DNA from: Antechinus flavipes
Taxonomy: Eukaryota
Assembly (NCBI RefSeq): GCF_016432865.1
Contig: NC_067403.1
Location: 200,322,001-200,386,000, forward strand
Reading direction: 5' to 3'
DNA: 64,000 nt
This document shows positions 13,119 through 54,023 of the stretch, one piece after another. A program made the translations under genes and the position numbers. The notes under the pieces were generated by a model, which had not been told where the DNA came from, did no database searches, and was given only the letters and a program-made list of their open reading frames with translations. How positions within the stretch are numbered: position 1 is the first letter of the stretch; each line of letters begins with the position of its first letter.

Positions 13119-13340
13119 TTGTTGTTTTTCAGTCACATTTGTGACCCCTTTTGGGGTTTTCTTGGCAAAGTTACTGGAGAGGTTGGCCATGTCCTTCTCC
13201 ACCTCATTTTTACAATGAGGAAACTGAAGTAAACAGAGTGAAGTGACTTGTCCAGGCCACACAGCTAGAAAGTGTCAGAAGCCAGATTTGAACTCAGGAA
13301 GATGAGTCTTTTTGACTCTCAGCCCAGTGCTCTATCCTGC
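13119..13340 (-). mobile_element. MAR1/MIR-like CORE-SINE
   Basis: CORE motif (gaggaaactga...gtgacttgtcca...gatttgaactcagg) with an RTE-like tail (ttcagtcacatttgtgacccc...ggttggccatgtccttctcc). Confidence 0.75.
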
Positions 13341-15699: not shown

Positions 15700-16900
15700 C
15701 TGTTCTGCGGGCGGCCTGGCTTGGGGCAAGGTGACTTCTTGTCCAAAGCCCCGTTTAGCCAGAGACTGGACGAGGGGACTCTGAGGACTCTTGGGTCTTC
15801 CCGATGCTTGCCTGGGCTAACCTCTGATACAAACCCTGTTCGTGCCTAAAGCCTCGCGCCCCCATCCATCTGAACGCTCCTTCGCCCCAGCTTCTCTTTT
15901 TTAAAGCCGCTGGTTCCGGCTCCCTGACCTCCCCTGGCCCACCCTGTTTAGGTCCAGCATTCCCTTCATGCTTCGCCCCTTCCTGGAAAGGCTGCTCTAA
16001 GCCTCAGCAGCGCGGGCCAGTCTCGTGTCCTTCTGGTCTCTCTCCGTCCCTCAAGGTGCCGCGGCCACGAGATGAGGGCTAACTCACTCATCCCACCATG
16101 GGCCGGCTGTTGTCAGAGTCCCTCATCAGGTCAGGGCTAGGGAACCGGGCACGTGCTAGGAAGCCCATTCCGTTTCCTCGCCTCTGGCGCAGAGGGTCCA
16201 GCTGCCCCCCGGCCCAGCGTAGCTCCTCTCCGCCCCCACCGCGGGTCCCTCGGGGGGAGGGCAGCGGCAGCAGGTGCCCCCCAGGCTGCCCCCGAACGCT
16301 CTCTATAGTGCTGTTTCCCTGTTGTGTCTCCTGCGCCACTCCTGCTCCCCACCCTTTCCCCGGAGTCATGCCCTCCAGCCCTCCGCTGGCCGCAGCCTCC
16401 TCCATCTCCCTCCCGGCCGCTGCCCCCACCACCAGCGTCTTCTCCTTCTCGCCGGTCAACATGATCTCTGCGGTCAAGCAGAAGAGCGCCTTCGCCCCCG
16501 TGGTGCGCCCGCCCGGCTCCCCGCCCCCCGCCTGCACCAGCACTAATGGCAGTGCCCTGCAAGGTGAGTCAGCCGCTATCCCACCAAACCCGCCTCCGGG
16601 GGGACAGAGAGCTGAGCCAGCGGAGGGGTTGGCCGGGGGCCTTGGCGGTGACGGGCTCCCGGGTGGGCTCTCTGACCAAGAGGAAGCAGGAAATGTGGGC
16701 GCCACTGCCTCCTGCTGGGCAATGACCTGGGGCCGGGCTCCCAGCCTGTACCCCGAAGGTGCCCATGAATGGTGACTGAGGAGCCAGTTGCCCATTGGTT
16801 GGCTGGCTTTCTAAAGAGCGGGGCCTTAGTCTCGGAGTGGGCGGGTATTTCGGTTCTGGGGGGTCATCCTGGAGGCCGTTCCCGGGTCCAAGGGGGGAGA
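15700..16900. promoter_or_regulatory. Intragenic CpG-rich island over the EBF4 penultimate exon
   Basis: Visibly high CpG and GC density compared with the CpG-depleted flanks. Boundaries estimated by eye. Confidence 0.6.
16366..16563 (+). CDS. EBF4: EBF4 penultimate coding exon ([17 protein letters not shown]...[16 protein letters not shown]...NGSALQ)
   Basis: Peptide matches the COE C-terminal region and the donor GTGAGT is at 16564. The homology-predicted acceptor is an unusual GAG (16363-16365). An in-frame TAG alternative at 16306-16308 also exists. Confidence 0.9.
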
Positions 16901-23484: not shown

Positions 23485-23490
23485 TTTATT
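23485..23490 (-). terminator. Probable polyadenylation signal of the NAT8-like gene
   Basis: AATAAA on the - strand about 570 nt after the stop codon, followed by a U/GU-rich tract. Confidence 0.65.
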
Positions 23491-24060: not shown

Positions 24061-24798
24061 TCAGTCCTCACCAGCAGGGCTGTTATCTTCAGTTCTGTTG
24101 CCAGTCAGGGAATAGTGGTAGCGAGTGACAGGGAGGTCAGCCAGGAACCCACTAAGTGTAGGCTGCAGGCATGTAGGGCCTGGGTGGAAGCCAAGGCTGG
24201 AGAAGAGCCTCTGGGCAGGACTATGGAGCATATGTGTGTCCAGCACCACGACCCGGCAGCCAGGGGAGCCGCGGGCAAAGGCCAGCACAGCCTGGCACAG
24301 GGCCCTGCCCACCCCATGACCCCGATGCTCGTGGCTTACAGCCAGGGACCTCAGCTCCAGCTCCCCATCTCCACTCTTCCCAATCCCTGACACACCCACC
24401 ATTCCCACCACGCTGCCATCTGTGTCCTCAGCCACCCAGAACCGAAACCCTGGGGCCCCCGGAGCCCTCAGACCAAGACTCATGTCTTGGTGAGCGTACA
24501 GAGCCCAAGCATGAGCCAACGCGGGGCGGCCAACAGCCAGGAATAGCGCCAGGACCAGCAAGGGCAGCAACAGGGAACGGGATGAGGTTGCCAGGAGAGT
24601 GAAGCCACATCCCAGCAGCAGCAGGAACCACGGCCGCCGCAGCATCCGGGCTCCGAGGGCCGACCCCATCTCGGCCGCCACCACCTCCAGGAGCTTCCGA
24701 AGGGCAGCCTCGTCCCCCGTGGCCTTTGGCCGTACCTGAACCCGCAGAGGCCCGTCACCATCGGCACCATCGGCGAGGTCTGTGGGCTTGGCCTCCAT
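24061..24798 (-). CDS. Camello/NAT8-family membrane-anchored GNAT N-acetyltransferase, 245 aa, single coding exon
   Basis: ATG at 24798 and stop at 24061-24063. It has the N-terminal 'VQVRP...DE' start, a hydrophobic segment (RPWFLLLLGCGFTLLATSSRSLLLPLLVLALFLA), 'FWVAE...VVGMVG', acetyl-CoA motif A 'LRSLAVSHEHRGHGVGRAL' and motif B 'VVLDT...AQRLFSSLGF'. All are colinear with NAT8/NAT8L/NAT14. A splice acceptor (pyrimidine tract + CAG) places the exon start at 24812, 14 nt before the ATG. Confidence 0.9.
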   Translation of the reverse strand: MEAKPTDLADGADGDGPLRVQVRPKATGDEAALRKLLEVVAAEMGSALGARMLRRPWFLLLLGCGFTLLATSSRSLLLPLLVLALFLAVGRPALAHAWALYAHQDMSLGLRAPGAPGFRFWVAEDTDGSVVGMVGVSGIGKSGDGELELRSLAVSHEHRGHGVGRALCQAVLAFARGSPGCRVVVLDTHMLHSPAQRLFSSLGFHPGPTCLQPTLSGFLADLPVTRYHYSLTGNRTEDNSPAGED

Positions 24799-26975
24799 CC
24801 CTGCGCCCAGGCCTGCAGCAGTGAAAGACCCGAAGAGCACGAGGTCACTATAACTGGAGGCCCCTGGGGCTCCCCACCCCCCAAATCAGCACTGGGTTCA
24901 AGTACAAGCTTCTCATAGAGCAGAGGGGTTTAGTCAAACTCTCCTCCCATTTCATTCCAGAAAAAGGAAGCTAAGGAGCTTGTCGCAGGGCAAATGCATC
25001 TTGGGACTCAGAAGGTTTTATGTCTCTGATGAGACTGGCAAACTTTTACCTGTTCCTTTTTTCTTCCTGATGGGAGTGTGGAGAGGGGGCTGAGTTCAGG
25101 CCAAGATGAGGCTGGAGCACTCCTGAAATCAAGCAGTAAAGATATCCAGGCCAGCCTCCCTCCATGCAGGGACTAGAGGGAGATAAGATGAGTCAGGAAA
25201 CCAGGAGGGCTGGACTGGCCTGGGCAGCAAATGCTACCACCCTTTTCAACCCCCTCCAACCTTCAGCTTGGCGCCTGTAAAAGATCCTGCCGATTCCATG
25301 CCCATCTCCTTGCCAGCCATCTCCCACAGCCACCAAGTCAGCTTCCCAAGGCCTAAGTCTGAGCCTCCCTCCACCTGCCTCCCAAAACCTTCAGGGGCTC
25401 CCTCCCACCTCTTCGGCTAGCATTTATTCCTCCCTAAGTGGATGGGACTTCTTATTCCAATCTTCTCTCAGAATTTCAGAACTCTAACAAGTCCTACCCA
25501 GGGCTCCCCCAAACACGCCACTCCATCTGTTCTTATCAGGGTCTAGATAGTCCCAGATAGTCTTTCTAAGCTTAGTTTAGACACCACTCCTTCTTTGGAG
25601 CCTTCCTGGATTTTCTCCAAGATCTGCCCTCCACCCCCCATGGTTAGTGCTTTCTCTTTTTTCAAATAAACCTTCCATTTCGTTATTTGTAAACATGAAG
25701 ACAAGGGCAATTTCATTTTGGTTTTAATTCCTAGCACCAGTAATCCCCCAATAAATATTCGTTGAATGAACTGAGGATTTACTTCTGAATCAAGATTCCC
25801 TATTTTCTCAAGAATAAAGATAGCAAAGCAGAGACTTGGTATTTTACTTAACATTCTGATACAGGGGAAAGATTATGGATTTGAGGTCATAAGATCTCAG
25901 GGCAAATCTAACCTCTGTCACTTACTACTCGGGTAATCCAGGATAAATCATAACCTTTCAAGGTTTCAACTTCCTCAAATGCAAAGGGAGGGAGTAGGCC
26001 CAGAGGCCCCCAGACATTGCCTCCAACTCCACAGTTATCAGTTTGTGCCTGTGTCTCAATAAGCCCAGGAAAAGGAAGCCTGAGCCCAGACTATGGGCAG
26101 CCTTCCCCTGGTGCCTCGAGGCTATCTTTGGGAGGAACTTTCCCCACCAATTAGTCCCCAATTTATCAGGTTCAATTACCCCAAACCTAAAACAAACAAA
26201 CCAAACCACATCCTTCATTTGACCCTCAAGCTATCCTCCAGCAATAAGCATTTGTTATTAGCCACAGGCCATTCGAATTTTACATAAGGTATATAAGACA
26301 GACCACAGGGGAGAAATAGAGTATAAGGAAGGACTCTGAGATGGGACGGCCCTCACAGCTGGGGACAAAGGCCTCCCCAAGAAGACATTGGAGCTGAGTT
26401 GGAAAGGAAAACACTCCAGGGATGGGGAGTACAAAGTCCCAGGATAAGGAAATAAAGCGTCATGTGTTAGGAGGAGCAATAAACCAATCTAGGACACTCA
26501 GCGTGGAAGAAGATTGGACAGGAAGGATGGGGGCATGTTGGGAAGAACTTGAAATGCCAAACAAAGAACTTTTTATTGGATCTTGGAGGTAAAAGGGACC
26601 CACTGGAACAGTGAGTGGGGGAGAGACAAGGGGTGACAATAGTCAGATGAGCGATGTAAAAGAATCACTTTGGCAGCTGAATGGAAAATGGACTGGAGTG
26701 GGTTGAGTTTTGGGTCACAGATATCAATGAAAAGACTATCACAATAGGTTGGCCAGTGGTGTCAAACTAAAATTGAAACAGGGTCATTAAATCATACATA
26801 AGGATCCCTGCAGGCTGCAAATTGCCTCAATTTTAAAACTATCTATACTAAATCTATACTTGATTGTGTTTGTATTAATTTTGTTAAGTATTTCCTGATT
26901 ATATTTTAATCTGGTTTGGGTGGACTCTTGTCCACATGTCTAATACTAATGATGGGGGCCTGAGCTAGGTGGGCA

Positions 26976-27680: not shown

Positions 27681-27684
27681 CTGT

Positions 27685-27812
27685 GGGGCAGCTAGTTGGT
27701 GCAGTGGATAGAGCACTAGCCCTGAAGTCAGGAGGACCTGAGGGCCTCAAATATATTTCCTGGCTTTGTGACCCTGGCCAAGTCACTTAACCCCAGTTGC
27801 TTCAGCAAAAAA
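27685..27812 (+). mobile_element. WSINE1-like SINE
   Basis: ggggcagctagttggtgcagtggatagagcac...gtcacttaaccccagttgcttcagc + A tail. Confidence 0.85.
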
Positions 27813-29444
27813 AAGCTAGGTTGTATATATTTCTTCTCTCTGATAAAAAAAAAAAAAAGTCCTAGGGTGTCACCTAACTGGATATCAATATTTTTTATTC
27901 ATTGTTTCGCCACCCACTCATTTGCTCCTCCACCTCCTGCTAGCTTCCAGCTTAAAGGTGCATGCCTTAAGATCACCTCCTAATCTACAAGTTTAATGAC
28001 CATTTCCTCACCCTCATTCTCTTAAGACATTTCTGCAGCATTTGACTTTGAAAACTGATTACTCACATGTTTGGGCCCCAAATGGCTCAAAAGTAAATGT
28101 AAATAGCGATTATTTCTGTTTTGGACAGAAACCTTGAGGGCCTTCCCCTTACAGATTTGTGTCTGTGTATATACGTATTGTATATACGCAATACACACAT
28201 GTATATACACATATAATACACACATATTATATACATATATGTACATATATACGTATACCGTGCATGTTTGTATGATGTGTGTGTATGTATATACATTCAC
28301 ACACACACACACACACACACACATATAATTTTTTAGCCTTCATTACTGATCGGGTGTTGCTTCAACTGCTGAGATCTGTTAAAGACCTTAGCTTTAAAAA
28401 GGCCAAAATTTCCCATTGTATCCAGACCATCTCCAGTTGTACTGATCTGTATCTTGCCACTGGACCCAGATGGCTCTGGAGGGGAAAATGAGGCAGGTGC
28501 CCTTGCACAGCCCTTCCTCACTCAAATCCAATTCACTTGCTTGTTATGGTATCGCCTTCCTGAAGTTCTGGTCATCTTCAAGAACAAAGGACAAATAACA
28601 ACAACATCCCACTTCCCTCCCAGACTATCTTTTCCTTTGCTTTCTGGGGAGTTACTCTCTTCTGAGACCTTTATTTGGCTCCTTGGCAGAATCATCCTTA
28701 AACTTAGCAATGCTGAACAATTCAATTTTTAGTCTTTTTCTCTTATGGGATCAAAAAGCAACCTTAGAGATCATCTCATTCAACCCTTTCATTTTACAAA
28801 TGGAGAAACTGAGGCTCAGAGAAGTCAAACAAATGACCTGCCCCAGATAAGCTGCAGAGCCTGAAACTCAATCCAATTCTTATCCATGATTCAGTGATTC
28901 CACTGTTTCTAGTACAAAATGGCGCCTCTTGGATCTCCACATTCTCTCTTGATCTCAATCACTCCCATCCAATAGCTTTAATGATAACTTCTATTTCTGG
29001 CCTAAAATCTGACTACCTATCCCGTTCTAACGTCTCCCCGAGCCTGACTCTTCAGCTCTGGGGGGGAAGTTTCATCTGGGGTGTTCGGTTGACATCCTTG
29101 GATTCAAGACAAATTCTATTTATCTCAAGCAGAACTCGTTTTGTTCTCCTCTAAACCGGCCCTTCCTCCGGAGTTCCCTGTGGTGTGACAGTATGACAGG
29201 TTTGGGTGAACGGCTGGACCCCAAGAGTTGCCAGTAAAGTTCGATGTCAGCTCGGAAGGAGGGCCCCGATGGAGTGCTCCACGTTCTCGCCTTACTTTTA
29301 GAAAAGCGATGACCTCTTGGCCGTAAAGGGGCTTCGCCTTCAGCTGAAGGGGACAAGGACAAGTTCCTTTTCCCCGACCCCCTCTTCTCCCCTAAACCCA
29401 CCCTCCCTGCCCGGTTTCCGGTAGTTCCACCGACGGCACCGCGG

Positions 29445-29902
29445 CCGCCTCCCTGCATCTCTGCCAGGACGCTCCCTCCTCCCCAAGCCCTCCCTGCCGG
29501 GACCCCAAGGACCGTGTCCCGGCCTCCCCGAATCTCTGCCAGGACGCTCCCTCCTCCCCAAGCCCTCCCTGCCGAGACCCCAAGGACCGTGTCCCGGCCT
29601 CCCTGCATCTCTGCCAGGACGCTCCCTCCTCCCCAAGCCCTCGCTGCCGGGACCCCAAGGACCGTGTCCCGGCCTCCCTGCATCTCTGCCAGGACGCTCC
29701 CTCCTCCCCAAGCCCTCCCTGCCGGGACCCCAAGGACCGTGCCCCGGCCTCCCCGCATCTCTGCCAGGACGCTCCCTCCTCCCCAAGCCCTCGCTGCCGG
29801 GACCCCAAGGACCGTGTCCCGGCCTCCCCGCATCTCTGCCAGGACGCTCCCTCCTCCCCAAGCCCTCGCTGCCGGGACCCCAAGGACCGCGTCCCGGCCT
29901 CC
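29445..29902. repeat. GC-rich minisatellite, 75-bp unit, about 6 copies
   Basis: 'gccaggacgctccctcctccccaagccc...' recurs at 29463, 29538, 29613, 29688, 29763 and 29838, with few substitutions. Confidence 0.97.
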
Positions 29903-30153
29903 GCCAGCGTTTCCTGGGTGGGCAGAAGCGCGGAGGGGAGGACGAGGCAGCGACAGCGGGGTCTCGGGGAGGCTGAGGCCCAGGCCCTGGGCTCGCTCGC
30001 CTCAGACACTCACGGACTGGGGAGAAGAGAAGGGACTCCCTCCACCCGGTCTGCCTCCCTCCTCCACTCGCGGTGCAGCCCTCGGGACCCTCCCCTACGG
30101 GACTTTAGGCGGGAGCCGACGCCGCGACCCACCCAGCAACATCCAGCACTCAC

Positions 30154-30280
30154 CTGCCTCCCGGGGCTGCTCCTTCCGGTGGTCGGTCCGGGGCCACGTG
30201 ACATACCGCCGCCGGCGCCTGAGAATGCTGATTGGGTAGCCCCGAGGGAGGCCCGCCCCCTCCTCGGCCAATAGGGAGAG
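30154..30280 (-). promoter_or_regulatory. CpG-island promoter and probable non-coding first exon (likely of the NAT8-like gene)
   Basis: Perfect donor CAG|GTGAGT on the - strand (last exon base 30154). Also ETS CCGGAAG at 30173-30179, E-box GTCACGTGGC at 30193-30202, two CCAAT boxes (30231-30235, 30268-30272) and a GC box between them. The link to the 24812 acceptor is inferred. Confidence 0.6.
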
Positions 30281-30975
30281 TAACAGAAAGGGGTGGGGCC
30301 ATATCTTCCTGCTCTCCTCGGCCGCACACGTGGGTGAGAGGTCTGCGTTCCCTCCCTGCATCCGGAGCTTGAGCATCCTCGGAGCGTCCAGGCCGGCTCA
30401 CACACCCTCGGAGGTGGGCGCTTAACGGGCGGCACTGGCTTCGCTCGTAGCATGCCAGAACCGGCCAGAGGGCTTTCTTGGTGAAGATGCTGGAGCAGAT
30501 TAATGCAAACAGGGTTAAGGGACTTGTCCCGGGTCACACGGCTAGGAAGTGTCGGAAGCCAGACTCCTGGCCCAAACTGAATGCACCGAGCTACCTAGCT
30601 GCCAGCATACAGCAGGCACTTAATAAATGCATCAATAATAATAATAATGATGATGATGATGATGACGATGTTTGTTCAATTGCATTGGACTCTGTGACCC
30701 AAATTGGGGTTTTCTTAGCGAAGATTATGGAGTGGTCTGCCATTTCCTTCTCCAGCTTATTTTACAAATGAGGAAACTGAGGCAAACAGGGTTAAGGGAC
30801 TTGCCCAGGATTAATGCATTGGACTCTGTGACCCAATTTATTTTATAGATGAGGAAACTGAGGCAAATGGGGTTAAGCAACTTGCCCAGGGTCACATGAC
30901 TAGTAAGTATCTGAGACTGGATTTGAACTCTGGTCTTTCTGACTCCACGCCCAACACTTTACTGTGACACGAAGA

Positions 30976-36299: not shown

Positions 36300-39200
36300 A
36301 ACATTTCATTTTTTATGATCAAAAATCACTTTTTATGATCACACTTTGCTAATTCCTTCTGTACCCCAGGCTGTACAGGGAAGCAAAGTCTCTGTAGTCA
36401 GAAGACCTGTTCAAATCCTATCTCTGACACTACATTTGTGACCTTGGACAAGTCACTTGATTTTCTTGACCTGTAAAATGAAACAGTTGGAACCTCTGAA
36501 GTCCTTTCCAGCTCTAAATCTGTGATTGACAAAGATAGGTCATCTGGACCAGGGACTTGAGTTCATAAAGGATTTTTTTATTATATTCCTACTTATTCTG
36601 GACATCGATGCCATGTCCACTATTTTTATAATCCAAAGGTTATTCTTGGCAGAGGAAACAAACAAAATCAGAGTAATTCTGTTCTGTCTTCTCACCCTAG
36701 TCTCTTCCTTAATTCTCATCTTTTCCCCAATATATCTAAAAATCAATCCCCTTCCCCCCTCCCACTCTTACTTGTCTTCCTCATCCTTCCCTCATATTGA
36801 ACTTTAGCATTCCTGAAATCTTCTTATCCTAACAACATACTATAACTTTCTATTCATCTACTATTACATATTTTTGATTTCACCTTTTGTATGTCTTTTT
36901 TTTTTAACCTAAATTAGTTGATATATCTTGCAATGGTATCTTTTGACAACTCCTACTTTTCTTCCTTATCGGAGGACATATTAGAGAAGCATTCTATGTA
37001 GTGGGGAAAGGGTTAGTTTGGGAGTCAGATGAGACTGAGTTCAAATCCGCTCTTTGATTGTTTGAGTTCTGTTGCTATGGGTTTAATCATATGTTAAAAA
37101 GAGGATAATAGTTTGATAATATTCATTTGACAGGGTTCTTGCAAAGATCAAATGAAGTAAAATATGAAATCATTTTGCAAATCTTAAAGTTATTATTATT
37201 ATTGGAATTGTTTATCTTTGTGAATTCTAAATTTCATTCCTGAGAATGCTGAGAATTCTTAAGTTGATTTCCCTTATAAAATTTTTAATCCCTGGGATCC
37301 TCCTTATCCTTCTCTGAATGCTTTTGAAATCTGTTCTCCCAGAATCAGATTCATATCAGACTATGCTTGGATTTCCAGCATCACAAATCATAAATTCTAA
37401 GATTTAATCACTTCCCATAATCTTCACCTGTGCAATTAATGTGAGTGAGAATCGGATTCAAGATAGAAGTTACCCTTCTTTATGCTACCATATTTTAAAA
37501 GATGAAGTAATCCACAAGTGAAATTAAGAAATTCTTAGCTTTTCACTTTGTGGCAAAGAAAGACACAGAAGAAACATTGACATAGAAAATGAGAATACCG
37601 TGTAAGTAAATCAAGAATTTATCAGCTGTCTTTCTTTTAAAATGTCTATGGTCTTTATGGAGCAACTAGATGGTGTATTGCATAGAGCACTGGCCCTGAA
37701 GTCTAGAGGACCTGAATTCAAATGCAGCCTTAGACATTTAACACTTCCTAGCTGGTTACCCTGGGCAGGTTACGTAACCCCCCAAAATGTGTATGGAAAG
37801 TGAGGGAGGGGAAGAAGAGAGAGTAGAGATGGGTATGGAGAGAAGGAGGAAGTGAGGGAGGGGAGAAGAGGAGTGGAGAAGAAAGGAGAAGAAAATGAAA
37901 AGAGAGAAAAAAAAGACATGAAAAAGAGACGGCAAAGAGAAGAGAGTTGAAATTTTCCATCAATACTAACTATATTTATCAGCCCTCTATATCTATATCC
38001 TGAACTCCCTCTCTAGTTCCTCTTTCTACCATTTCTCTTCAGTATACATACTAGTATGGAGAGGAATAAACTATAAAGTTCTATCTTTTCAATAGTACAA
38101 AACTTGAGGAGCTGAGGCTTGGTGAAGGAGCAATCTATAATTATGTTTTCTCTGAGATGTTTGTAAAATGCTTAGCACAAATCCTGGCATGTAGTAAGTA
38201 CCTAGTAAATGCCCTTTGCCTCCCTTGTACAACATGTATAGTCATGTTGACTAGAGGGGTCCCCGATGACAGAGGAACCAAGAGAAGAAAAGAGATTTTC
38301 TCAATTATTTATGGGCTCTGGTATGAATCCTTTTTGTTTGCTGTCAGGTCAAATAAAGTTTTAATATCTTGTTATTCCAAGTGATGAGCTGAGGAGTTTC
38401 CTCCTCCTCCCCTGCCTTATTATTTTTTTTTGAGACATATTTGAGCCAAATGGAAAAACCCTATGTAGAGACATGAATACTCAAGACTGGTAACTAAGAA
38501 ATCCTCATACTTGAATTTGCTATTGCAGAGTTCTAGTAATTGGTCACAGATTACAAGTATGCCCTGTACTTTTTCAAATGTTATTTGAAGCAAACAAAAT
38601 TATATACATTCCTACATATATAATAAGAAACAAATTATACATTTTCTCAATCAGCAGGTACTAATAATACAATTATGATCAGATAGGTAGAGCCACAATA
38701 TTTCTGGTATTAAAAGGGGGGGTTTCATATATAATAGGTTTTAGACCATAGATTTGGGGAGCTAGGGACACCTAGTGTGGGAGTGAGGAATTTTCTTTGA
38801 TCCACAAGTCTAATGACTTTTCCCTGATGTTTTATTTCTGAGTCTAGTTATTCTTTCTTCTCATAAATAAACCCTAGGAAGCACACTCATATAACTTAGT
38901 ATGCTGACCAGGGGAAACCATCCATAGAGCATCCAGTGATAAAAGCAGTAACAGAAGGGAATAAAGTAATTAAAGATCAAGGATAGGTGGTCTGAACCTA
39001 TGGAATGGGGATGGGGATGGGTTAAGGGGATTCTGGTCTTTAGATGGGAATTTAGGGATTAAGATTTAGAACAGTGAAGATGAAAGCTCTGAGACTGGGA
39101 GCGTCCTGGAATTGGGGGCTTCACAACTTGCTCCTACATAGCTCATAGTCAAGTAGGGACCAAGATCACAGTAAAGATAAATAACTAGATTGAATCTGAT

Positions 39201-40692: not shown

Positions 40693-40955
40693 TTAGCGTC
40701 CCGCGCCACCTGCCCGCACCCCACGGCCCCGCAGGCGGTCCAGCCGCCGTCTTAGGTCAGGGGGCACCTTGGCACCTGCCGCCAGGAGCTCTCGCAGACG
40801 CTGCTTGGGCGTCTTGCTGAGACGGAAGTGGCAGGGAGTGGGACCTTCCTCGAAAGAGACTCGACAGCCCTTGGTGGCCGAGTGGTACCCCTCCGCGCTG
40901 GCTGTCACCATGTAATCACCGGGAGTCAGCATCCGCCAGTAGTCCCCGCCTGGGG
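40693..40955 (-). CDS. CPXM1: CPXM1 exon 14 (APGGDYWRMLTPGDY...KVPPDLRRRLDRLRGRGVRAGGAGR*)
   Basis: CAG acceptor and stop TAA at 40693-40695. The 14 exons sum to 2463 nt = 820 aa + stop with no frame break. Confidence 0.96.
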
Positions 40956-41656
40956 CTGGGGAGAGGGACACAGACATATAAGATTCTAGAGCTGGAATAG
41001 AGTTAATGACTGCCAGAACTGAACCTGTCCCCCAGAAATCTGTGACCCCCCCATACATACCCAGAATCCTACTTGCCCTCCTGAGTCTTGCAAAGATCTT
41101 CCAAATCTAGGACCCAAGTGGGCCCTCCTGGAGATCCCACTGAGCTAGCCCCAGCTGCCCTCGTCAAATTCTAAAAGCCCACTTTCAGACTTTGAAATTC
41201 CTCCAGTGAAGGGGAACACTCTCCCTATTCTGGGACCCTTCCAATAATTGGTGAAGGACTTTCCTTCTAAACTTTAGGGTCTTCCTCAACCACTGAGCAC
41301 TCAGGCCTCCCCAAATCTTAATAATTCCTTCAAGTCCAAAACTTAATTCATAGTCTAGAATTCCTGATCACTCCTGGGTGTCTCTCCACGCCCCCCCCCA
41401 TTAGTCTCCCACATTTTTCTAGTTCCATCTGCCCTCCCACATTCCATACAATTCTACTCCAAACTGAAGTTTCCCAATCTTCCCAAGATCCCTTTATTCC
41501 CTGGAAACCTCCATTTCAGATATTTCCCTTCTTCAAACCTCAGGACTTCTCCTTACTCCCCAAGATCCCCACAATTTCAAGGATGAAAGGTTCTTTTTGG
41601 CTATATTGGGTTGGGGCAGAAGGAGGCTCCTAGTCTGTCTACCCATGGTGACCTAC

Positions 41657-45790: not shown

Positions 45791-45961
45791 TTTTTTTTTG
45801 TTTTATTTTATTTTATTTTATTTTTGCTGAGGCAATTGGGGTTAAGTGACTTGCCCAGGGTCACACAGCTAGGAAGTCTTAAGTGTCTGAGGTCAGATTT
45901 GAACTCAGGTCCTCCTGACTTCAGGGCTGGTCCTCTATCCACTGCGCCACCTAGCTGCCCC
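45791..45961 (-). mobile_element. WSINE1-like tRNA-derived SINE with TSD, in CPXM1 intron 8
   Basis: Reverse complement reads GGGGCAGCTAGGTGGCGCAGTGGATAGAGG...GAGTTCAAATC...AACCCCAATTGCCTCAGC + A tail. TSD gaag(t/c)acaaataag at 45777-45790 and 45962-45975. Confidence 0.9.
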
Positions 45962-46059
45962 GAAGCACAAATAAGTTAATAAATGTAAGGTGCTTTGCAA
46001 AATTTAAAGCCCTTTGTAAATGCCAGTTATTTTTTTTAAGGGAAATTAAACTGCTACAT

Positions 46060-47120: not shown

Positions 47121-47319
47121 CTGGGTAAGAAGGGAAGAAAGACTTTGTTACCAATACCCTACCTGGTTTTCCCCCACAGTTAATCCCAGTGACCTCTAGG
47201 ACTTGTTGTTCTGGCCCTAAACCCCCCCCCCCAGCCACAACTTTCCCCTTCTTCTCTACTCCCAACCACTGCCTCCTGGAACTCCCATCCTGCTTCATGT
47301 TCTCTCCCCGGGTCTTCAC

Positions 47320-47470
47320 CTGGGAGCAGACAGGCTAGCACCTCAAGGCGGAGGCAGGCTGCACCCCCATCTAGCCAGGTCTGGGGTAGTAGCCTTATGT
47401 ATCTGGCCACCTGAGGCTGAGAGAACAGTGCCAGCACTGATGTGTCAGGGTCCGAATTCCCAGGGAACAC
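47320..47470 (-). CDS. CPXM1: CPXM1 exon 6 (VFPGNSDPDT...YIRLLPQTWLDGGAACLRLEVLAC)
   Basis: Canonical AG/GT, 151 nt, end of the discoidin domain. Confidence 0.96.
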
Positions 47471-47940
47471 CTGAGGAGGAGAGAAGTCATAATCCATTCC
47501 CAGGGAACTCCCACTTTGGAGCCCACGGTACCAAAATAGCACCCTGTCCAATGCTACCCACACCCAAAAGAGGGTGGGACCTCAACAATGATCTCTGCAT
47601 CCGTTTCTGCCTTCCCATCTCCCTGTCTCCCTTTAAGTCTTTATATGGGTTTTTAATCTCACCATCTTCCTGAGCCTATCTTACCATCTCCTTCTGTCGA
47701 TCTCTGTCTGTACCTCCTGTTCTATCTGACTATCTCTCTATCTCCCCATGTCTCTCTTCCACATGTATCTCGGCAGGCACAGAGCAGGATCTGTCTGACA
47801 CACATGAAGGACAGCTCTATTCTAAAGGAATTAGAGAGTTGAAGTCACTGAGGCTCGAGTTGTGGGATGCGATAGTCTGATCTGCCCACAGCCCACCCTC
47901 CCATGCCCTTCCCCTGCTCATCCCTCCCACCCCCATTCAC

Positions 47941-52687: not shown

Positions 52688-52770
52688 ATGAACAGGAAAA
52701 AGATAAATTGGGACCAGTCGCTGAGGTCTGGCAACACTGATAACTCCCGCAGTTCTCCGCCCTCGAGTGT
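52688..52770 (+). CDS. Exon 1 of a putative 221-aa membrane protein (MNRKKINWDQSLRSGNTDNSRSSPPSS)
   Basis: ATG with G at -3 and 83 nt open to a GTGAGT donor at 52771 in phase 2, matching the phase of the acceptor at 53173. Confidence 0.6.
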
Positions 52771-53173
52771 GTGAGTGACAGAAGCCAGTGGCCAGATGCT
52801 CCCCCAGAAGTTCCTGGCCCTATCACTCCACTCTCTCAGGAGGAGCCCTCTTGCCTTTCTAGATTCCCCTCCCCTCCAACTTTGCTCTCTACACCTTCCC
52901 CGTCCCTCAACTGGCCCACTCCTCCGTGCCCCACTCCCAGTCTCTTAGGACTCTATGATTTCAAGAGACCCGGCTATGTTTGCGCCCTGAATCCGGGGAC
53001 AGAGGAATAGCTCCGGAGGAGCTGGTGGGAGGGGGAGAACTTTGCGGGGGGGCGGGGATTTGGGAATGGGATTTGAGAAGTGAAGTGCCCACAGGCCCCG
53101 GCTGCTGTCGTTTTTCCGACACATAATCCCCTGCCCCACTTTCTGTGCCTATCGTGCTGTGTGCCCCCCCCAG

Positions 53174-53357
53174 GTCCCGGAATTTGCAGGAGTCCGCGGA
53201 CTGCGTGAGGAGTCCCCCACGCCCGCGGTACAGAGGCAGGAGGAGGAATATTCGGTGCCAAAAATGGATTGAGGAATGTGTGAAGGCGTGCACTAAAGAC
53301 AAAGACAGGGTCCGAGACAAGGACCGGGATCAAGATAGGTCCAGGGACCTGGACGAC

Positions 53358-53397
<40 letters not shown>

Positions 53398-53756
53398 AGA
53401 TTGGGGATGGGGACGGGGATGGGGACGGAGATGGAGATGGGGACGGGGATGGGGACAGCTCCACGTGGCAGGTTCCATGCTCGAGCCAACCCAGCCAATG
53501 CAGCAGCTACCTTTCCTCCGAAACCCATCGAACGAGACACCCCGAGGCCTTCAGCTTGCACTGGCCTCATCCTCTGGAGCTGGCCCTGGACTTGTCCGCC
53601 GGCCTGGCCCTGCTGTCCTTGCTGGGAGAAGGGGGCTCAGAAATGATGCTGCCGCCCTTGTTCCTCTTTATCCTTTACCTGTTGCTCACCATGCCCTTGG
53701 CGATGGTGCTCGGCTGCAAGAAACGAACTCGAAGGCTGACTTGGAGGGATGGTTAA
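53174..53756 (+). CDS. Exon 2 of a putative 221-aa membrane protein (acidic GD repeat + C-terminal hydrophobic hairpin), in the C20orf141/TMEM239 syntenic slot
   Basis: Strong acceptor (tttctgtgcc...ccccccccag) and 583 nt open to TAA. Two hydrophobic stretches are followed by a basic tail KKRTRR. AATAAA lies at 54018-54023. Confidence 0.65.
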
Positions 53757-54017
53757 TCCAGAGCCCTGGGTCTAGTACACGCTCAGCCCCAAACGCAGGG
53801 AGCTCTCCTCCGAAAACAGAACAAATCACCAAATATTGAAGTCCATATCTGGAATACAGAGCCCCGATCAGAAGACAGATTCGATCTCCCTAATCCCTGC
53901 CTGACCTCCAACAAGAATCTTGAATTGGAAAGCAAACACGGGAGCCCAAAATATAGCCCGAGTACAATGGATCCCAGACCCAAACAGGACTCAGACTGGA
54001 ATACACCTGGTAAAAGC

Positions 54018-54023
54018 AATAAA
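54018..54023 (+). terminator. Polyadenylation signal AATAAA of the putative 221-aa gene
   Basis: About 260 nt after the stop at 53756. Confidence 0.55.

What the first reader, a model, noticed from the sequence alone, without database searches (positions are those of the whole stretch)
24061..24812. Intact Camello/NAT8-family acetyltransferase gene between EBF4 and CPXM1
Seen: a 245-aa uninterrupted ORF with the full Camello layout (hydrophobic membrane anchor + GNAT motifs A/B), its own splice acceptor and a polyA signal. Knowledge: I recall no protein-coding gene between EBF4 and CPXM1 in human; NAT8/NAT8B are at 2p13, NAT8L at 4p16 and NAT14 at 19q13. The protein mixes NAT8-like (FWVAE..VVGMVG, VLDT) and NAT14-like (RP..LLLL, HR..GVGR) features and is close to none of them. 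Inference: this is a distinct Camello subfamily member, either ancient and lost in eutherians or marsupial-specific, with an unknown acetyl-acceptor. An upstream intron and CpG promoter argue against a recent dead retrocopy.
Basis: partly seen in the sequence, partly recalled or inferred. Interest (0 to 1): 0.75.

Follow-up and report, generated by a model that had tools for sequence, protein, structure and literature searches.

The report
Divergent marsupial camello acetyltransferase beside CPXM1
This is a real, intact and selectively maintained membrane-anchored acetyltransferase gene, the fast-evolved marsupial copy of an old vertebrate 'camello' gene that sits next to CPXM1 in platypus, lizard and bird and was found in no placental mammal; databases already annotate it in other marsupials, so it is a modest rather than a striking find.

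Summary
A 245-codon ORF lies on the minus strand at 24061-24798, with a GNAT domain (Pfam E 2.5e-17), a hydrophobic hairpin, a conserved splice acceptor and a conserved AATAAA.

The gene is not unknown. NCBI annotates orthologues at 77-95% identity in Sminthopsis, koala, Dromiciops, wallaby, bilby and Monodelphis as 'putative N-acetyltransferase camello / 8B(-like)'. In Monodelphis and Dromiciops it lies tail-to-tail with an EBF-family gene.

It is not close to nothing. Trees place it beside a second, conserved marsupial copy, then platypus, inside the vertebrate 'camello' lineage. Grouping it with NAT8 proper is rejected (AU p = 0.005). In platypus, Anolis and falcon the camello gene lies just downstream of CPXM1 on the same strand, as here, so this copy occupies the ancestral position. 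No eutherian member of this lineage appeared in three protein searches.

The marsupial copy diverged sharply. Its stem branch is about 1.0 substitutions per site, and 38 of 87 lineage-conserved positions changed. The usual GNAT general-acid Tyr is Phe, and a D-I-x-x-x-Y motif is deleted. Since then it has been under purifying selection (dN/dS 0.22-0.30).

The parts
24061..24798 (-). Complete coding sequence of 245 codons plus TGA, in a single coding exon
   Evidence: ORF list and translation. Orthologues at 77-95% identity in seven marsupial sequences. dN/dS 0.22-0.30.
24187..24453 (-). GNAT acetyltransferase domain, residues 116-204
   Evidence: Pfam PF00583 E 2.5e-17. AlphaFold model pLDDT 85.4. 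Best Foldseek PDB matches are GNAT enzymes at E about 1e-9.
24307..24324 (-). Acetyl-CoA-binding motif A, R159-G-H-G162-V-G164
   Evidence: R159 and G162 are invariant in the 64-sequence family alignment. The G-V-G form is shared only with the marsupial paralogue T2.
24202..24204 (-). Codon of Phe199, at the position of the usual GNAT general-acid Tyr
   Evidence: Tyr in at least 85% of the non-marsupial family rows and in T2, but Phe in all eight T1 sequences. It aligns with Tyr in PDB 5c82, 9cr5, 6yug and 7ypu.
24514..24633 (-). Hydrophobic hairpin (membrane anchor), residues about 56-95
   Evidence: Kyte-Doolittle peaks at residues 64 and 83. Modelled as helices 56-73 and 77-110.
24799..24812 (-). 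14 nt of 5' UTR at the start of the coding exon; the acceptor AG is at 24814-24813
   Evidence: CTGCAG|G is conserved in the window, Dromiciops and Logan contig L004. The koala and wallaby models join an upstream exon at the corresponding point of the protein.
24813..25049 (-). Inferred 237-nt intron in the 5' UTR
   Evidence: The donor GGAACAG|GTAAAAGTTTGCCAGTCT is identical in the window and Dromiciops. No RNA evidence was obtained.
25050..25090 (-). 3' end of an inferred upstream non-coding exon; its 5' limit and the transcription start are unknown
   Evidence: Conserved block next to the donor. In this species the frame carries a stop and no ATG, so translation starts at 24798.
23485..23490 (-). 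AATAAA polyadenylation signal, 570 nt past the stop
   Evidence: The only AATAAA or ATTAAA within 760 nt downstream. It lies in a block nearly identical to Dromiciops.
40693..41058 (-). Context: ORF holding the last coding part of CPXM1, upstream on the same strand
   Evidence: Pfam CarboxypepD_reg. 80%, 69% and 68% identical to the end of the CPXM-like genes that precede camello in platypus, Anolis and falcon.
16253..16586 (+). Context: late coding exon of the EBF-family gene (EBF4 by synteny), convergent with the acetyltransferase gene
   Evidence: 91% identical to a coding exon of the Dromiciops gene whose product carries COE1_DBD, TIG and COE1_HLH. The same tail-to-tail neighbour is seen in Monodelphis.

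Best explanation
The gene, called T1 here, encodes a membrane-anchored GNAT N-acetyltransferase of the Camello/NAT8 family.

Origin. T1 descends from the old vertebrate 'camello' lineage (lineage B). In amniotes that lineage lies immediately downstream of CPXM1 on the same strand, and T1 still occupies that position. On the marsupial stem, after the split from monotremes, the gene duplicated. The copy elsewhere in the genome (T2) kept the ancestral sequence. The copy at the ancestral site (T1) changed rapidly and has been held by purifying selection since the marsupial radiation. No eutherian member of lineage B was found.

Inferred mechanism. A hairpin of two hydrophobic helices (residues about 56-95) anchors the protein in an internal membrane. 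The GNAT core binds acetyl-CoA through motif A (R159..G162.G164) and transfers the acetyl group to an amine of an unknown acceptor. T1 replaced the usual general-acid Tyr by Phe and lost the family's D-I-x-x-x-Y motif. Its acceptor or its chemistry therefore probably differs from that of its relatives.

Shown here: the ORF, domain, fold, orthologues, synteny, phylogenetic position, selection, and conserved splice and poly(A) signals. Inferred: membrane location, catalysis, and the timing of the duplication. Not tested: expression and substrate.
For: ORF and GNAT domain. AlphaFold pLDDT 85.4 and pTM 0.80, with GNAT enzymes as the best PDB matches. Orthologues at 77-95% identity in six annotated marsupials plus one Logan contig, all intact. 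dN/dS 0.24, 0.22 and 0.30 for three pairs; the CDS is 88% identical to Logan contig L004 against 71-75% in its flanks. Careful ML tree: T1+T2 98/88, plus platypus 100/98, tetrapod lineage B 100/99. Seven derived residues are shared by T1 and T2, against none shared by T2 and platypus. Placing T1 with NAT8 proper is rejected (AU p = 0.0046). Synteny: CPXM-like gene followed by camello on the same strand in platypus, falcon and Anolis, the same order as in the window. An EBF gene lies tail-to-tail in Monodelphis and Dromiciops. The window holds only one NAT8-like copy. T1 changed at 38 of 87 conserved lineage-B positions against 16 of 87 in T2; stem branches are 1.01 and 0.34. Motif A is kept, Tyr199 is Phe, Gln192 is His, and D-I-x-x-x-Y is lost. 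No eutherian appeared among the lineage-B hits. The best eutherian hits to T1 score at most 72 bits and fall in lineage A. Donor, acceptor and AATAAA are conserved.
Against: So transcription, the intron and the start site are inferred only. The AU test does not formally reject T1 lying outside tetrapod lineage B (delta lnL 25.2, p = 0.067), nor a duplication before the monotreme split (p = 0.37). T1 sits on a long branch. The genomic position of T2 could not be found: no neighbour lies within 10 kb in Monodelphis or wombat. Which copy moved therefore rests on T1's synteny alone. Loss of the general-acid Tyr could mean weak or no catalysis. Eutherian absence rests on annotated proteins, not on genome searches.
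Confidence: 0.72

Rival explanations
1. T1 is maintained by selection but is catalytically impaired. It would be a membrane-bound acetyl-CoA-binding pseudoenzyme, or a regulatory partner of T2 or NAT8, rather than an active transferase.
For: Phe replaces the near-invariant Tyr in all eight T1 sequences. The family-wide D-I-x-x-x-Y motif is deleted and Gln192 is His. 44% of the lineage-conserved positions changed on one branch. A conserved paralogue, T2, could keep the ancestral job.
Against: Motif A and the FWVAE strand are intact. From general knowledge of GNAT enzymes, Tyr-to-Phe changes usually slow catalysis rather than abolish it. One solved GNAT, 4h89, has Trp at this position. A dN/dS of 0.21 over the hairpin and GNAT part of the protein suggests the active-site region is still constrained.
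Confidence: 0.18
2. T1 is an old, separate Camello subfamily that arose before tetrapods diverged. Its place beside T2 would then be an artefact of a long branch or of shared base composition.
For: The AU test does not reject T1 outside tetrapod lineage B at the 0.05 level (p = 0.067). The T1 stem is very long, at 1.01. The same tree also joins birds with mammals, which suggests some compositional pull.
Against: Long-branch attraction would pull T1 towards the root or other long rows, not into a nested position that fits the species tree. Seven derived residues are shared with T2, against none for the alternative. T1 sits exactly where the lineage-B gene sits in platypus, Anolis and falcon. 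No T1-like protein exists outside marsupials in an exhaustive search of 1.84 billion representatives.
Confidence: 0.06
3. The ORF is a conserved but untranscribed or non-functional relic, or a retrocopy.
For: No RNA evidence was obtained here. The coding sequence has no intron, as in a retrocopy. No protein identical to this ORF was returned from the collection.
Against: Eight intact ORFs across Australidelphia and Didelphimorphia. dN/dS 0.22-0.30. The CDS is more conserved than its flanks. A 5' UTR intron with conserved donor and acceptor, and a conserved poly(A) signal. The position is ancestral, not a new insertion. A single coding exon is normal in this family: the lineage-B genes of platypus, Anolis, Monodelphis and Astyanax are each called as one uninterrupted coding block.
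Confidence: 0.04

Closest known systems
Marsupial paralogue T2, annotated 'N-acetyltransferase 8-like / CML1 / 8F1-like' (P0011 wallaby, P0174 Monodelphis, P0010 wombat)
   Same: Sister clade in the ML tree (98/88). 42-46% identity over about 86-93% of the length. Same layout of beta1, hydrophobic hairpin and GNAT core. Shares derived residues such as G-V-G in motif A and L-V-L-A-L in the hairpin.
   Different: T2 keeps the lineage's conserved residues: it differs at 16 of 87 against 38 of 87 for T1. These include Tyr199, Gln192 and the D-I-x-x-x-Y motif. T2 lacks T1's acidic N- and C-terminal extensions. It lies on another chromosome-scale contig in Monodelphis and bilby.
'Probable N-acetyltransferase camello' of platypus, birds, squamates, turtles and amphibians (lineage B: P0179, P0182, P0191, P0012; Xenopus tropicalis nat8.1, P0283)
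   Same: Same genomic position, downstream of CPXM1 on the same strand. Same clade (100/99). 36-45% identity. The coding sequence is in one block in platypus and Anolis.
   Different: These proteins are 215-235 aa and mutually about 50-68% identical. T1 is 242-245 aa and far more diverged, with altered catalytic-site residues.
Eutherian NAT8 / NAT8B (ATase2 / ATase1), lineage A, with Dromiciops P0037
   Same: Same family and architecture. NAT8 and NAT8B are described as type-II ER membrane lysine acetyltransferases (PMC8041774). NAT8 is also the cysteine-S-conjugate N-acetyltransferase (Veiga-da-Cunha 2010, as listed in the references of PMC4133703).
   Different: Only 28-36% identity. A different ancient lineage: a clade joining T1 with amniote lineage A is rejected (AU p = 0.0046). 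In Anolis and falcon the lineage-A gene is the second gene of the tandem pair after CPXM1. In Dromiciops the lineage-A gene lies on a different contig from T1, and in Myotis it is annotated together with TPRKB.
Mouse Camello proteins CMLO3 and E0CYR6, and zebrafish CMLO3 (Karmodiya et al. 2014, PMC4133703)
   Same: Same family. That paper already reports two camello groups that split in early gnathostomes, which matches lineages A and B here. It also notes an N-terminal transmembrane helix plus the acetyltransferase domain.
   Different: The paper reports histone H4 acetylation and perinuclear location for these proteins, and embryonic defects after CMLO3 knock-down in zebrafish. None of this has been tested for T1. 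The paper did not include marsupials or the CPXM1 linkage.

Membership tests
GNAT superfamily (Pfam PF00583 Acetyltransf_1) | Profile match above the curated cut-off | tested here: met
   63.6 bits against a cut-off of 20.7, E 2.5e-17. PF13508 also matches at 57.4 bits against 27.
GNAT superfamily | Motif A, R/Q-x-x-G-x-G/A, which binds the pyrophosphate of acetyl-CoA | tested here: met
   R159-G-H-G162-V-G164. R159 and G162 are invariant in 64 family sequences.
GNAT superfamily | GNAT alpha/beta fold | tested here: met
   AlphaFold pLDDT 85.4, pTM 0.80. The best 50 Foldseek PDB matches listed are all GNAT acetyltransferases, at E 9e-10 to 2e-7, probability 1.00.
GNAT superfamily | General-acid Tyr before the G-F of motif B. 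This is common in the superfamily but not universal. | tested here: not met
   Phe199 in all eight T1 sequences. Tyr in T2 and in at least 85% of the other family rows. The position aligns with Tyr in 5c82, 9cr5, 6yug and 7ypu, and with Trp in 4h89.
Camello/NAT8 family | Hydrophobic hairpin inserted between the N-terminal beta1/alpha1 and the rest of the GNAT core | tested here: met
   Hydropathy peaks at residues 64 and 83. Helices 56-73 and 77-110. The segment aligns with the same segment of all family members.
Camello/NAT8 family | Family-wide conserved residues: the FWVAE strand and the D-I-x-x-x-Y motif before it | tested here: inconclusive
   FWVAE is present (F120-E124). The D-I-x-x-x-Y motif is lost: Asp is Gly, Ile is deleted and Tyr is Ala.
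Camello lineage B (platypus, sauropsid, amphibian and fish 'camello') | Falls inside the clade | tested here: met
   ML tree: tetrapod lineage B 100/99, mammals 100/98, T1+T2 98/88. The AU test of exclusion gives delta lnL 25.2, p = 0.067, so exclusion is disfavoured but not formally rejected.
Camello lineage B | Position directly downstream of CPXM1 on the same strand (amniotes) | tested here: met
   Seen in platypus L001, falcon L002 and Anolis L003. In the window CPXM1 exons lie at 40.7-47.6 kb (minus strand) and T1 at 24.06-25.05 kb (minus strand).
NAT8 proper (lineage A: eutherian NAT8/NAT8B, rodent Cml) | Falls inside the clade | tested here: not met
   A clade of T1 plus amniote lineage A costs 39.9 lnL, AU p = 0.0046.
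NAT14 / NAT8L | Sequence or clade membership | not tested
The 'NAT14-like' G-V-G motif is explained as a derived feature shared with T2.
Active N-acetyltransferase | Acetyl-CoA-dependent transfer to an acceptor | not testable with these tools
   Needs recombinant protein and assays.

The most novel reading that the evidence does not exclude
After duplication in the marsupial stem, the copy left at the ancestral CPXM1 site took on a new role specific to marsupials. That role could be a new acetyl acceptor, or a non-catalytic acetyl-CoA-sensing or regulatory function. The marks of the change are the Tyr-to-Phe replacement at the general-acid position, loss of the D-I-x-x-x-Y motif, and new acidic tails. 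Placental mammals would lack the whole lineage.
Probability: 0.3. Interest if true: 0.45.

Novelty: new member of a known kind. Interest (0 to 1): 0.3.

Why it matters
The finding gives an evolutionary frame for a small, poorly understood enzyme family. That family includes NAT8 of the mercapturic acid pathway, the ER lysine acetyltransferases, camello of gastrulation and histone H4 acetylation, and NAT8L.

In two sauropsids, Anolis and falcon, genes of both camello lineages lie in tandem just after CPXM1. This points to an ancestral amniote array. No eutherian member of lineage B was found. Marsupials kept two copies, one conservative and one strongly remodelled at catalytic-site positions.

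That pair is a natural experiment on what the invariant Tyr and the D-I-x-x-x-Y motif do in this family. It also flags a gene that placental-based annotation names misleadingly, as '8B' or '8-like'. Beyond that it is ordinary gene-family turnover, and the gene models already exist in RefSeq.

Tried and rejected
- RNA evidence. The look-up of sequencing runs listed no holder on record as RNA. Expression and the intron are therefore untested. Local BLAST in the sandbox used the window file only as the subject.
- T2's locus.
- Older synteny. In Astyanax the neighbour is a Zip-family gene, not CPXM1. The caecilian locus showed no neighbour. The CPXM1 linkage is thus shown for amniotes only.
- A second NAT8-like copy or a remnant in the window: none (tblastn).
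- The upstream ATG used in the koala and wallaby models: absent here, with a stop in frame. It is probably not part of the conserved protein.
- My first dN/dS run used a wrong frame for L004. It was corrected.
- Literature. No paper on this marsupial gene was found. Veiga-da-Cunha 2010 is not held in the library.
- The search of earlier findings by words found nothing.
- The sequence of Sminthopsis P0001 is not on record in the contig index.
- Two tree or AU scripts got no answer from the machine and were re-run.
Full report
**Observation**

On the minus strand an ATG at 24798 opens a 245-codon frame that ends with a TGA at 24063-24061. Pfam places a GNAT domain at residues 116-204 (PF00583, 63.6 bits against a cut-off of 20.7, E 2.5e-17; PF13508, E 2e-15). 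NCBIfam gives only sub-threshold matches to bacterial GNAT models.

Motif A reads R159-G-H-G162-V-G164. Two hydrophobic peaks are centred on residues 64 and 83. An AlphaFold model built on a 64-sequence family alignment is confident (pLDDT 85.4, pTM 0.80). It shows beta1 at 21-24, helices at 27-54, 56-73 and 77-110, and then the GNAT sheet. Its best PDB matches are all GNAT enzymes (Foldseek E about 1e-9).

**Context in the window**

CPXM1-type exons lie on the minus strand: the F5/8 type C domain at 47180-47563 and the carboxypeptidase regulatory domain at 40693-41058. A late exon of an EBF-family gene lies on the plus strand at 16253-16586. It is 91% identical to a coding exon of the Dromiciops gene whose product carries COE1_DBD, TIG and COE1_HLH. 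So the acetyltransferase gene lies downstream of CPXM1 on the same strand and is convergent with the EBF gene. That this EBF gene is EBF4 is an inference from synteny. The 64-kb window holds no second NAT8-like copy or remnant (tblastn).

**The gene is already annotated elsewhere and is conserved**

The word-index search found orthologues, called T1 here, in these marsupials:
- Sminthopsis crassicaudata, 95%
- koala, 85%
- Dromiciops, 84%
- tammar wallaby, 82%
- bilby, 79%
- Monodelphis, 77%
- one Logan contig, 87%

All are intact. NCBI names them 'putative N-acetyltransferase camello', '8B', '8B-like' or '8-like'. No protein identical to the window's own product was returned, so this exact product may not be annotated for this genome.

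In Monodelphis and Dromiciops the gene is a single coding block of 729 nt. It lies 5-6 kb from an EBF-family gene, tail-to-tail, as in the window. The Dromiciops locus L008 is colinear with window 36.7 to 15.9 kb.

Pairwise Nei-Gojobori dN/dS is 0.24 (window against Logan L004), 0.22 (window against Dromiciops) and 0.30 (L004 against Dromiciops), with dS of 0.24-0.35. The coding sequence is 88% identical to L004, against 71-75% for the flanks. This is purifying selection, not a decaying relic.

**Gene structure**

The acceptor CTGCAG|G is conserved in the window, Dromiciops and L004. The donor GGAACAG|GTAAAAGTTTGCCAGTCT, with the exon ending at 25050, is identical in the window and Dromiciops. 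This implies a 237-nt intron in the 5' UTR.

The koala and wallaby models carry 19-21 extra N-terminal residues, which would come from that upstream exon. In the window the same frame has a stop and no ATG. The conserved start is therefore the ATG at 24798.

The only AATAAA within 760 nt downstream lies at 23490-23485, in a block nearly identical to Dromiciops.

The minisatellite has no counterpart in the Dromiciops alignment, while the flanking part is about 70% conserved. Nothing shows that it drives this gene.

I could not test transcription. No listed holder of the sequence is on record as RNA.

**Relatives and phylogeny**

An exhaustive phmmer search of 1.84 billion representatives gave these best hits:
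- the T1 cluster
- a marsupial 'NAT8-like' protein at 45% identity (T2)
- a turtle protein at 38%
- sharks, lungfish, amphibians and fish
- the best eutherian proteins (Myotis, hippopotamus, Suncus), at no more than 72 bits

Searching with T2 showed clear orthologues at 47-55% identity in platypus, birds, squamates, turtles and amphibians, and at about 42% in fish. No eutherian appeared. A profile of this lineage gave 149 hits at E <= 1e-40. The 120 best are turtles, tuatara, squamates, alligator, birds, many amphibians (including Xenopus tropicalis nat8.1), coelacanth, sturgeon, paddlefish, teleosts, platypus and marsupials. Again none is eutherian.

A careful ML tree (69 rows, LG+C20+F+G4 by PMSF) splits the family into two old lineages.
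- Lineage A holds eutherian NAT8/NAT8B, monotreme NAT8, Dromiciops P0037 and many amphibian Cml proteins.
- Lineage B holds the 'camello' proteins.

This split was already reported by Karmodiya et al. 2014 (PMC4133703). T1 is sister to T2 (UFboot/SH-aLRT 98/88), then platypus (100/98), inside tetrapod lineage B (100/99).

AU tests gave three results:
- T1 with amniote lineage A is rejected (delta lnL 39.9, p = 0.0046).
- T1 outside tetrapod lineage B is disfavoured but not rejected (delta lnL 25.2, p = 0.067).
- A duplication before the monotreme split cannot be excluded (p = 0.37).

A simple count of derived residues favours T1+T2. Seven are shared by T1 and T2, none by T2 and platypus, and two by T1 and platypus.

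**Synteny decides what the locus is**

In platypus (L001), falcon (L002) and Anolis (L003), the lineage-B gene lies directly downstream of a CPXM-like gene on the same strand. The last exon of that CPXM-like gene is 80%, 68% and 69% identical, respectively, to the window's. In falcon VPS16 follows. From general knowledge, VPS16 is a neighbour of CPXM1 in mammals.

Falcon and Anolis carry a second tandem copy, and in the tree it falls in lineage A (100/95). In these two sauropsids the order is therefore CPXM1, then camello-B, then camello-A. That points to an ancestral amniote array of the same order.

The window gene thus occupies the ancestral lineage-B position. It is neither a retrocopy nor a gene moved in by rearrangement.

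T2 lies on another chromosome-scale contig in Monodelphis and bilby. Its neighbours could not be found. In Astyanax the neighbour is a Zip-family gene, so the CPXM1 linkage is shown for amniotes only.

**What changed in T1**

The T1 stem is 1.01 substitutions per site, against 0.34 for T2. Branches within T1 are short. Of 87 columns at least 90% conserved in non-marsupial tetrapod lineage B, T1 differs at 38 and T2 at 16.

Among family-wide conserved positions, T1 keeps R23, D29, P56, S75, FWVAE (120-124), V154, R159, G162, F174-A175, G180, L186, T188, A195 and G203-F204. It has changed the following:
- The D-I-x-x-x-Y motif before beta2 is lost: Asp is Gly, Ile is deleted and Tyr is Ala.
- Pro138 is Gly.
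- Gln192 is His.
- Tyr199 is Phe.

Position 199 aligns with Tyr in PDB 5c82, 9cr5, 6yug and 7ypu, and with Trp in 4h89. From general knowledge of GNAT enzymes, this Tyr usually acts as the general acid that protonates the leaving CoA thiolate. T1 also gained acidic N- and C-terminal extensions.

**Most likely working**

T1 is probably a membrane-anchored GNAT that binds acetyl-CoA through an intact motif A and acetylates an amine. Its acceptor, its chemistry or both have probably shifted from those of its conservative paralogue. I put about 0.7 on 'functional, selectively maintained lineage-B camello paralogue, probably still an acetyltransferase'. I put about 0.2 on a catalytically impaired, regulatory form.

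Known activities in the family are cysteine-S-conjugate N-acetylation (NAT8), ER-lumen lysine acetylation (NAT8/NAT8B, PMC8041774), histone H4 acetylation at the nuclear envelope (CMLO3, PMC4133703) and aspartate N-acetylation (NAT8L). The sequence does not tell which, if any, applies to T1.

**Verdict on novelty**

The gene models exist in RefSeq and the family is known. No paper on this marsupial gene was found.
- the gene's identity as the positional descendant of the CPXM1-linked camello gene
- the absence of any eutherian lineage-B member in the searches
- the marsupial duplication
- the remodelling of catalytic-site residues under later purifying selection

This is a new member of a known kind, of modest interest.

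Noticed in passing
window 29447-29902: A 75-bp unit is repeated 6.1 times (96% matches) inside a CpG-rich stretch between the acetyltransferase gene and CPXM1. It produces several long spurious ORFs on both strands (29120-30239). It has no counterpart in the Dromiciops alignment, whereas the adjacent 29965-30563 is about 70% conserved and carries CCAAT-like and CACGTG motifs. This could be an unassigned promoter.
   Followed up: partly
L002:13480-14166 and L003:18411-19082: Falcon and Anolis have a second acetyltransferase gene in tandem after the camello gene. In the tree it groups with NAT8 proper (lineage A). NAT8 therefore seems to have started beside CPXM1 and to have moved in mammals. 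In Dromiciops the lineage-A gene is on a different contig from T1, and in Myotis the NAT8B protein is annotated together with TPRKB.
   Followed up: partly
window 45802-45968, 27684-27814, 1245-1388, 13231-13337, 30835-30953, 37658-37778: A short interspersed element of about 120-160 bp occurs at least six times in the window and at least six times in the 20-kb Dromiciops locus L008, at 70-95% identity. It is probably a marsupial SINE.
   Followed up: no
window 52688-54023: Another first-stage note on this window (s1-196646) reports a hidden two-exon gene divergent from CPXM1. I saw only low-complexity Asp/Gly-rich ORFs there, with a weak sub-threshold Pfam hit.
   Followed up: no
   Followed up: no
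P0002 (koala) and P0004 (wallaby), N-termini: The RefSeq models begin 19-21 residues upstream, at an ATG in the 5' exon. That ATG is missing in the window species, where a 20-nt gap removes it and the frame has a stop. In Dromiciops it is present in the DNA but the annotated protein does not use it. The extension is probably an annotation choice or an upstream ORF rather than conserved protein.
   Followed up: yes
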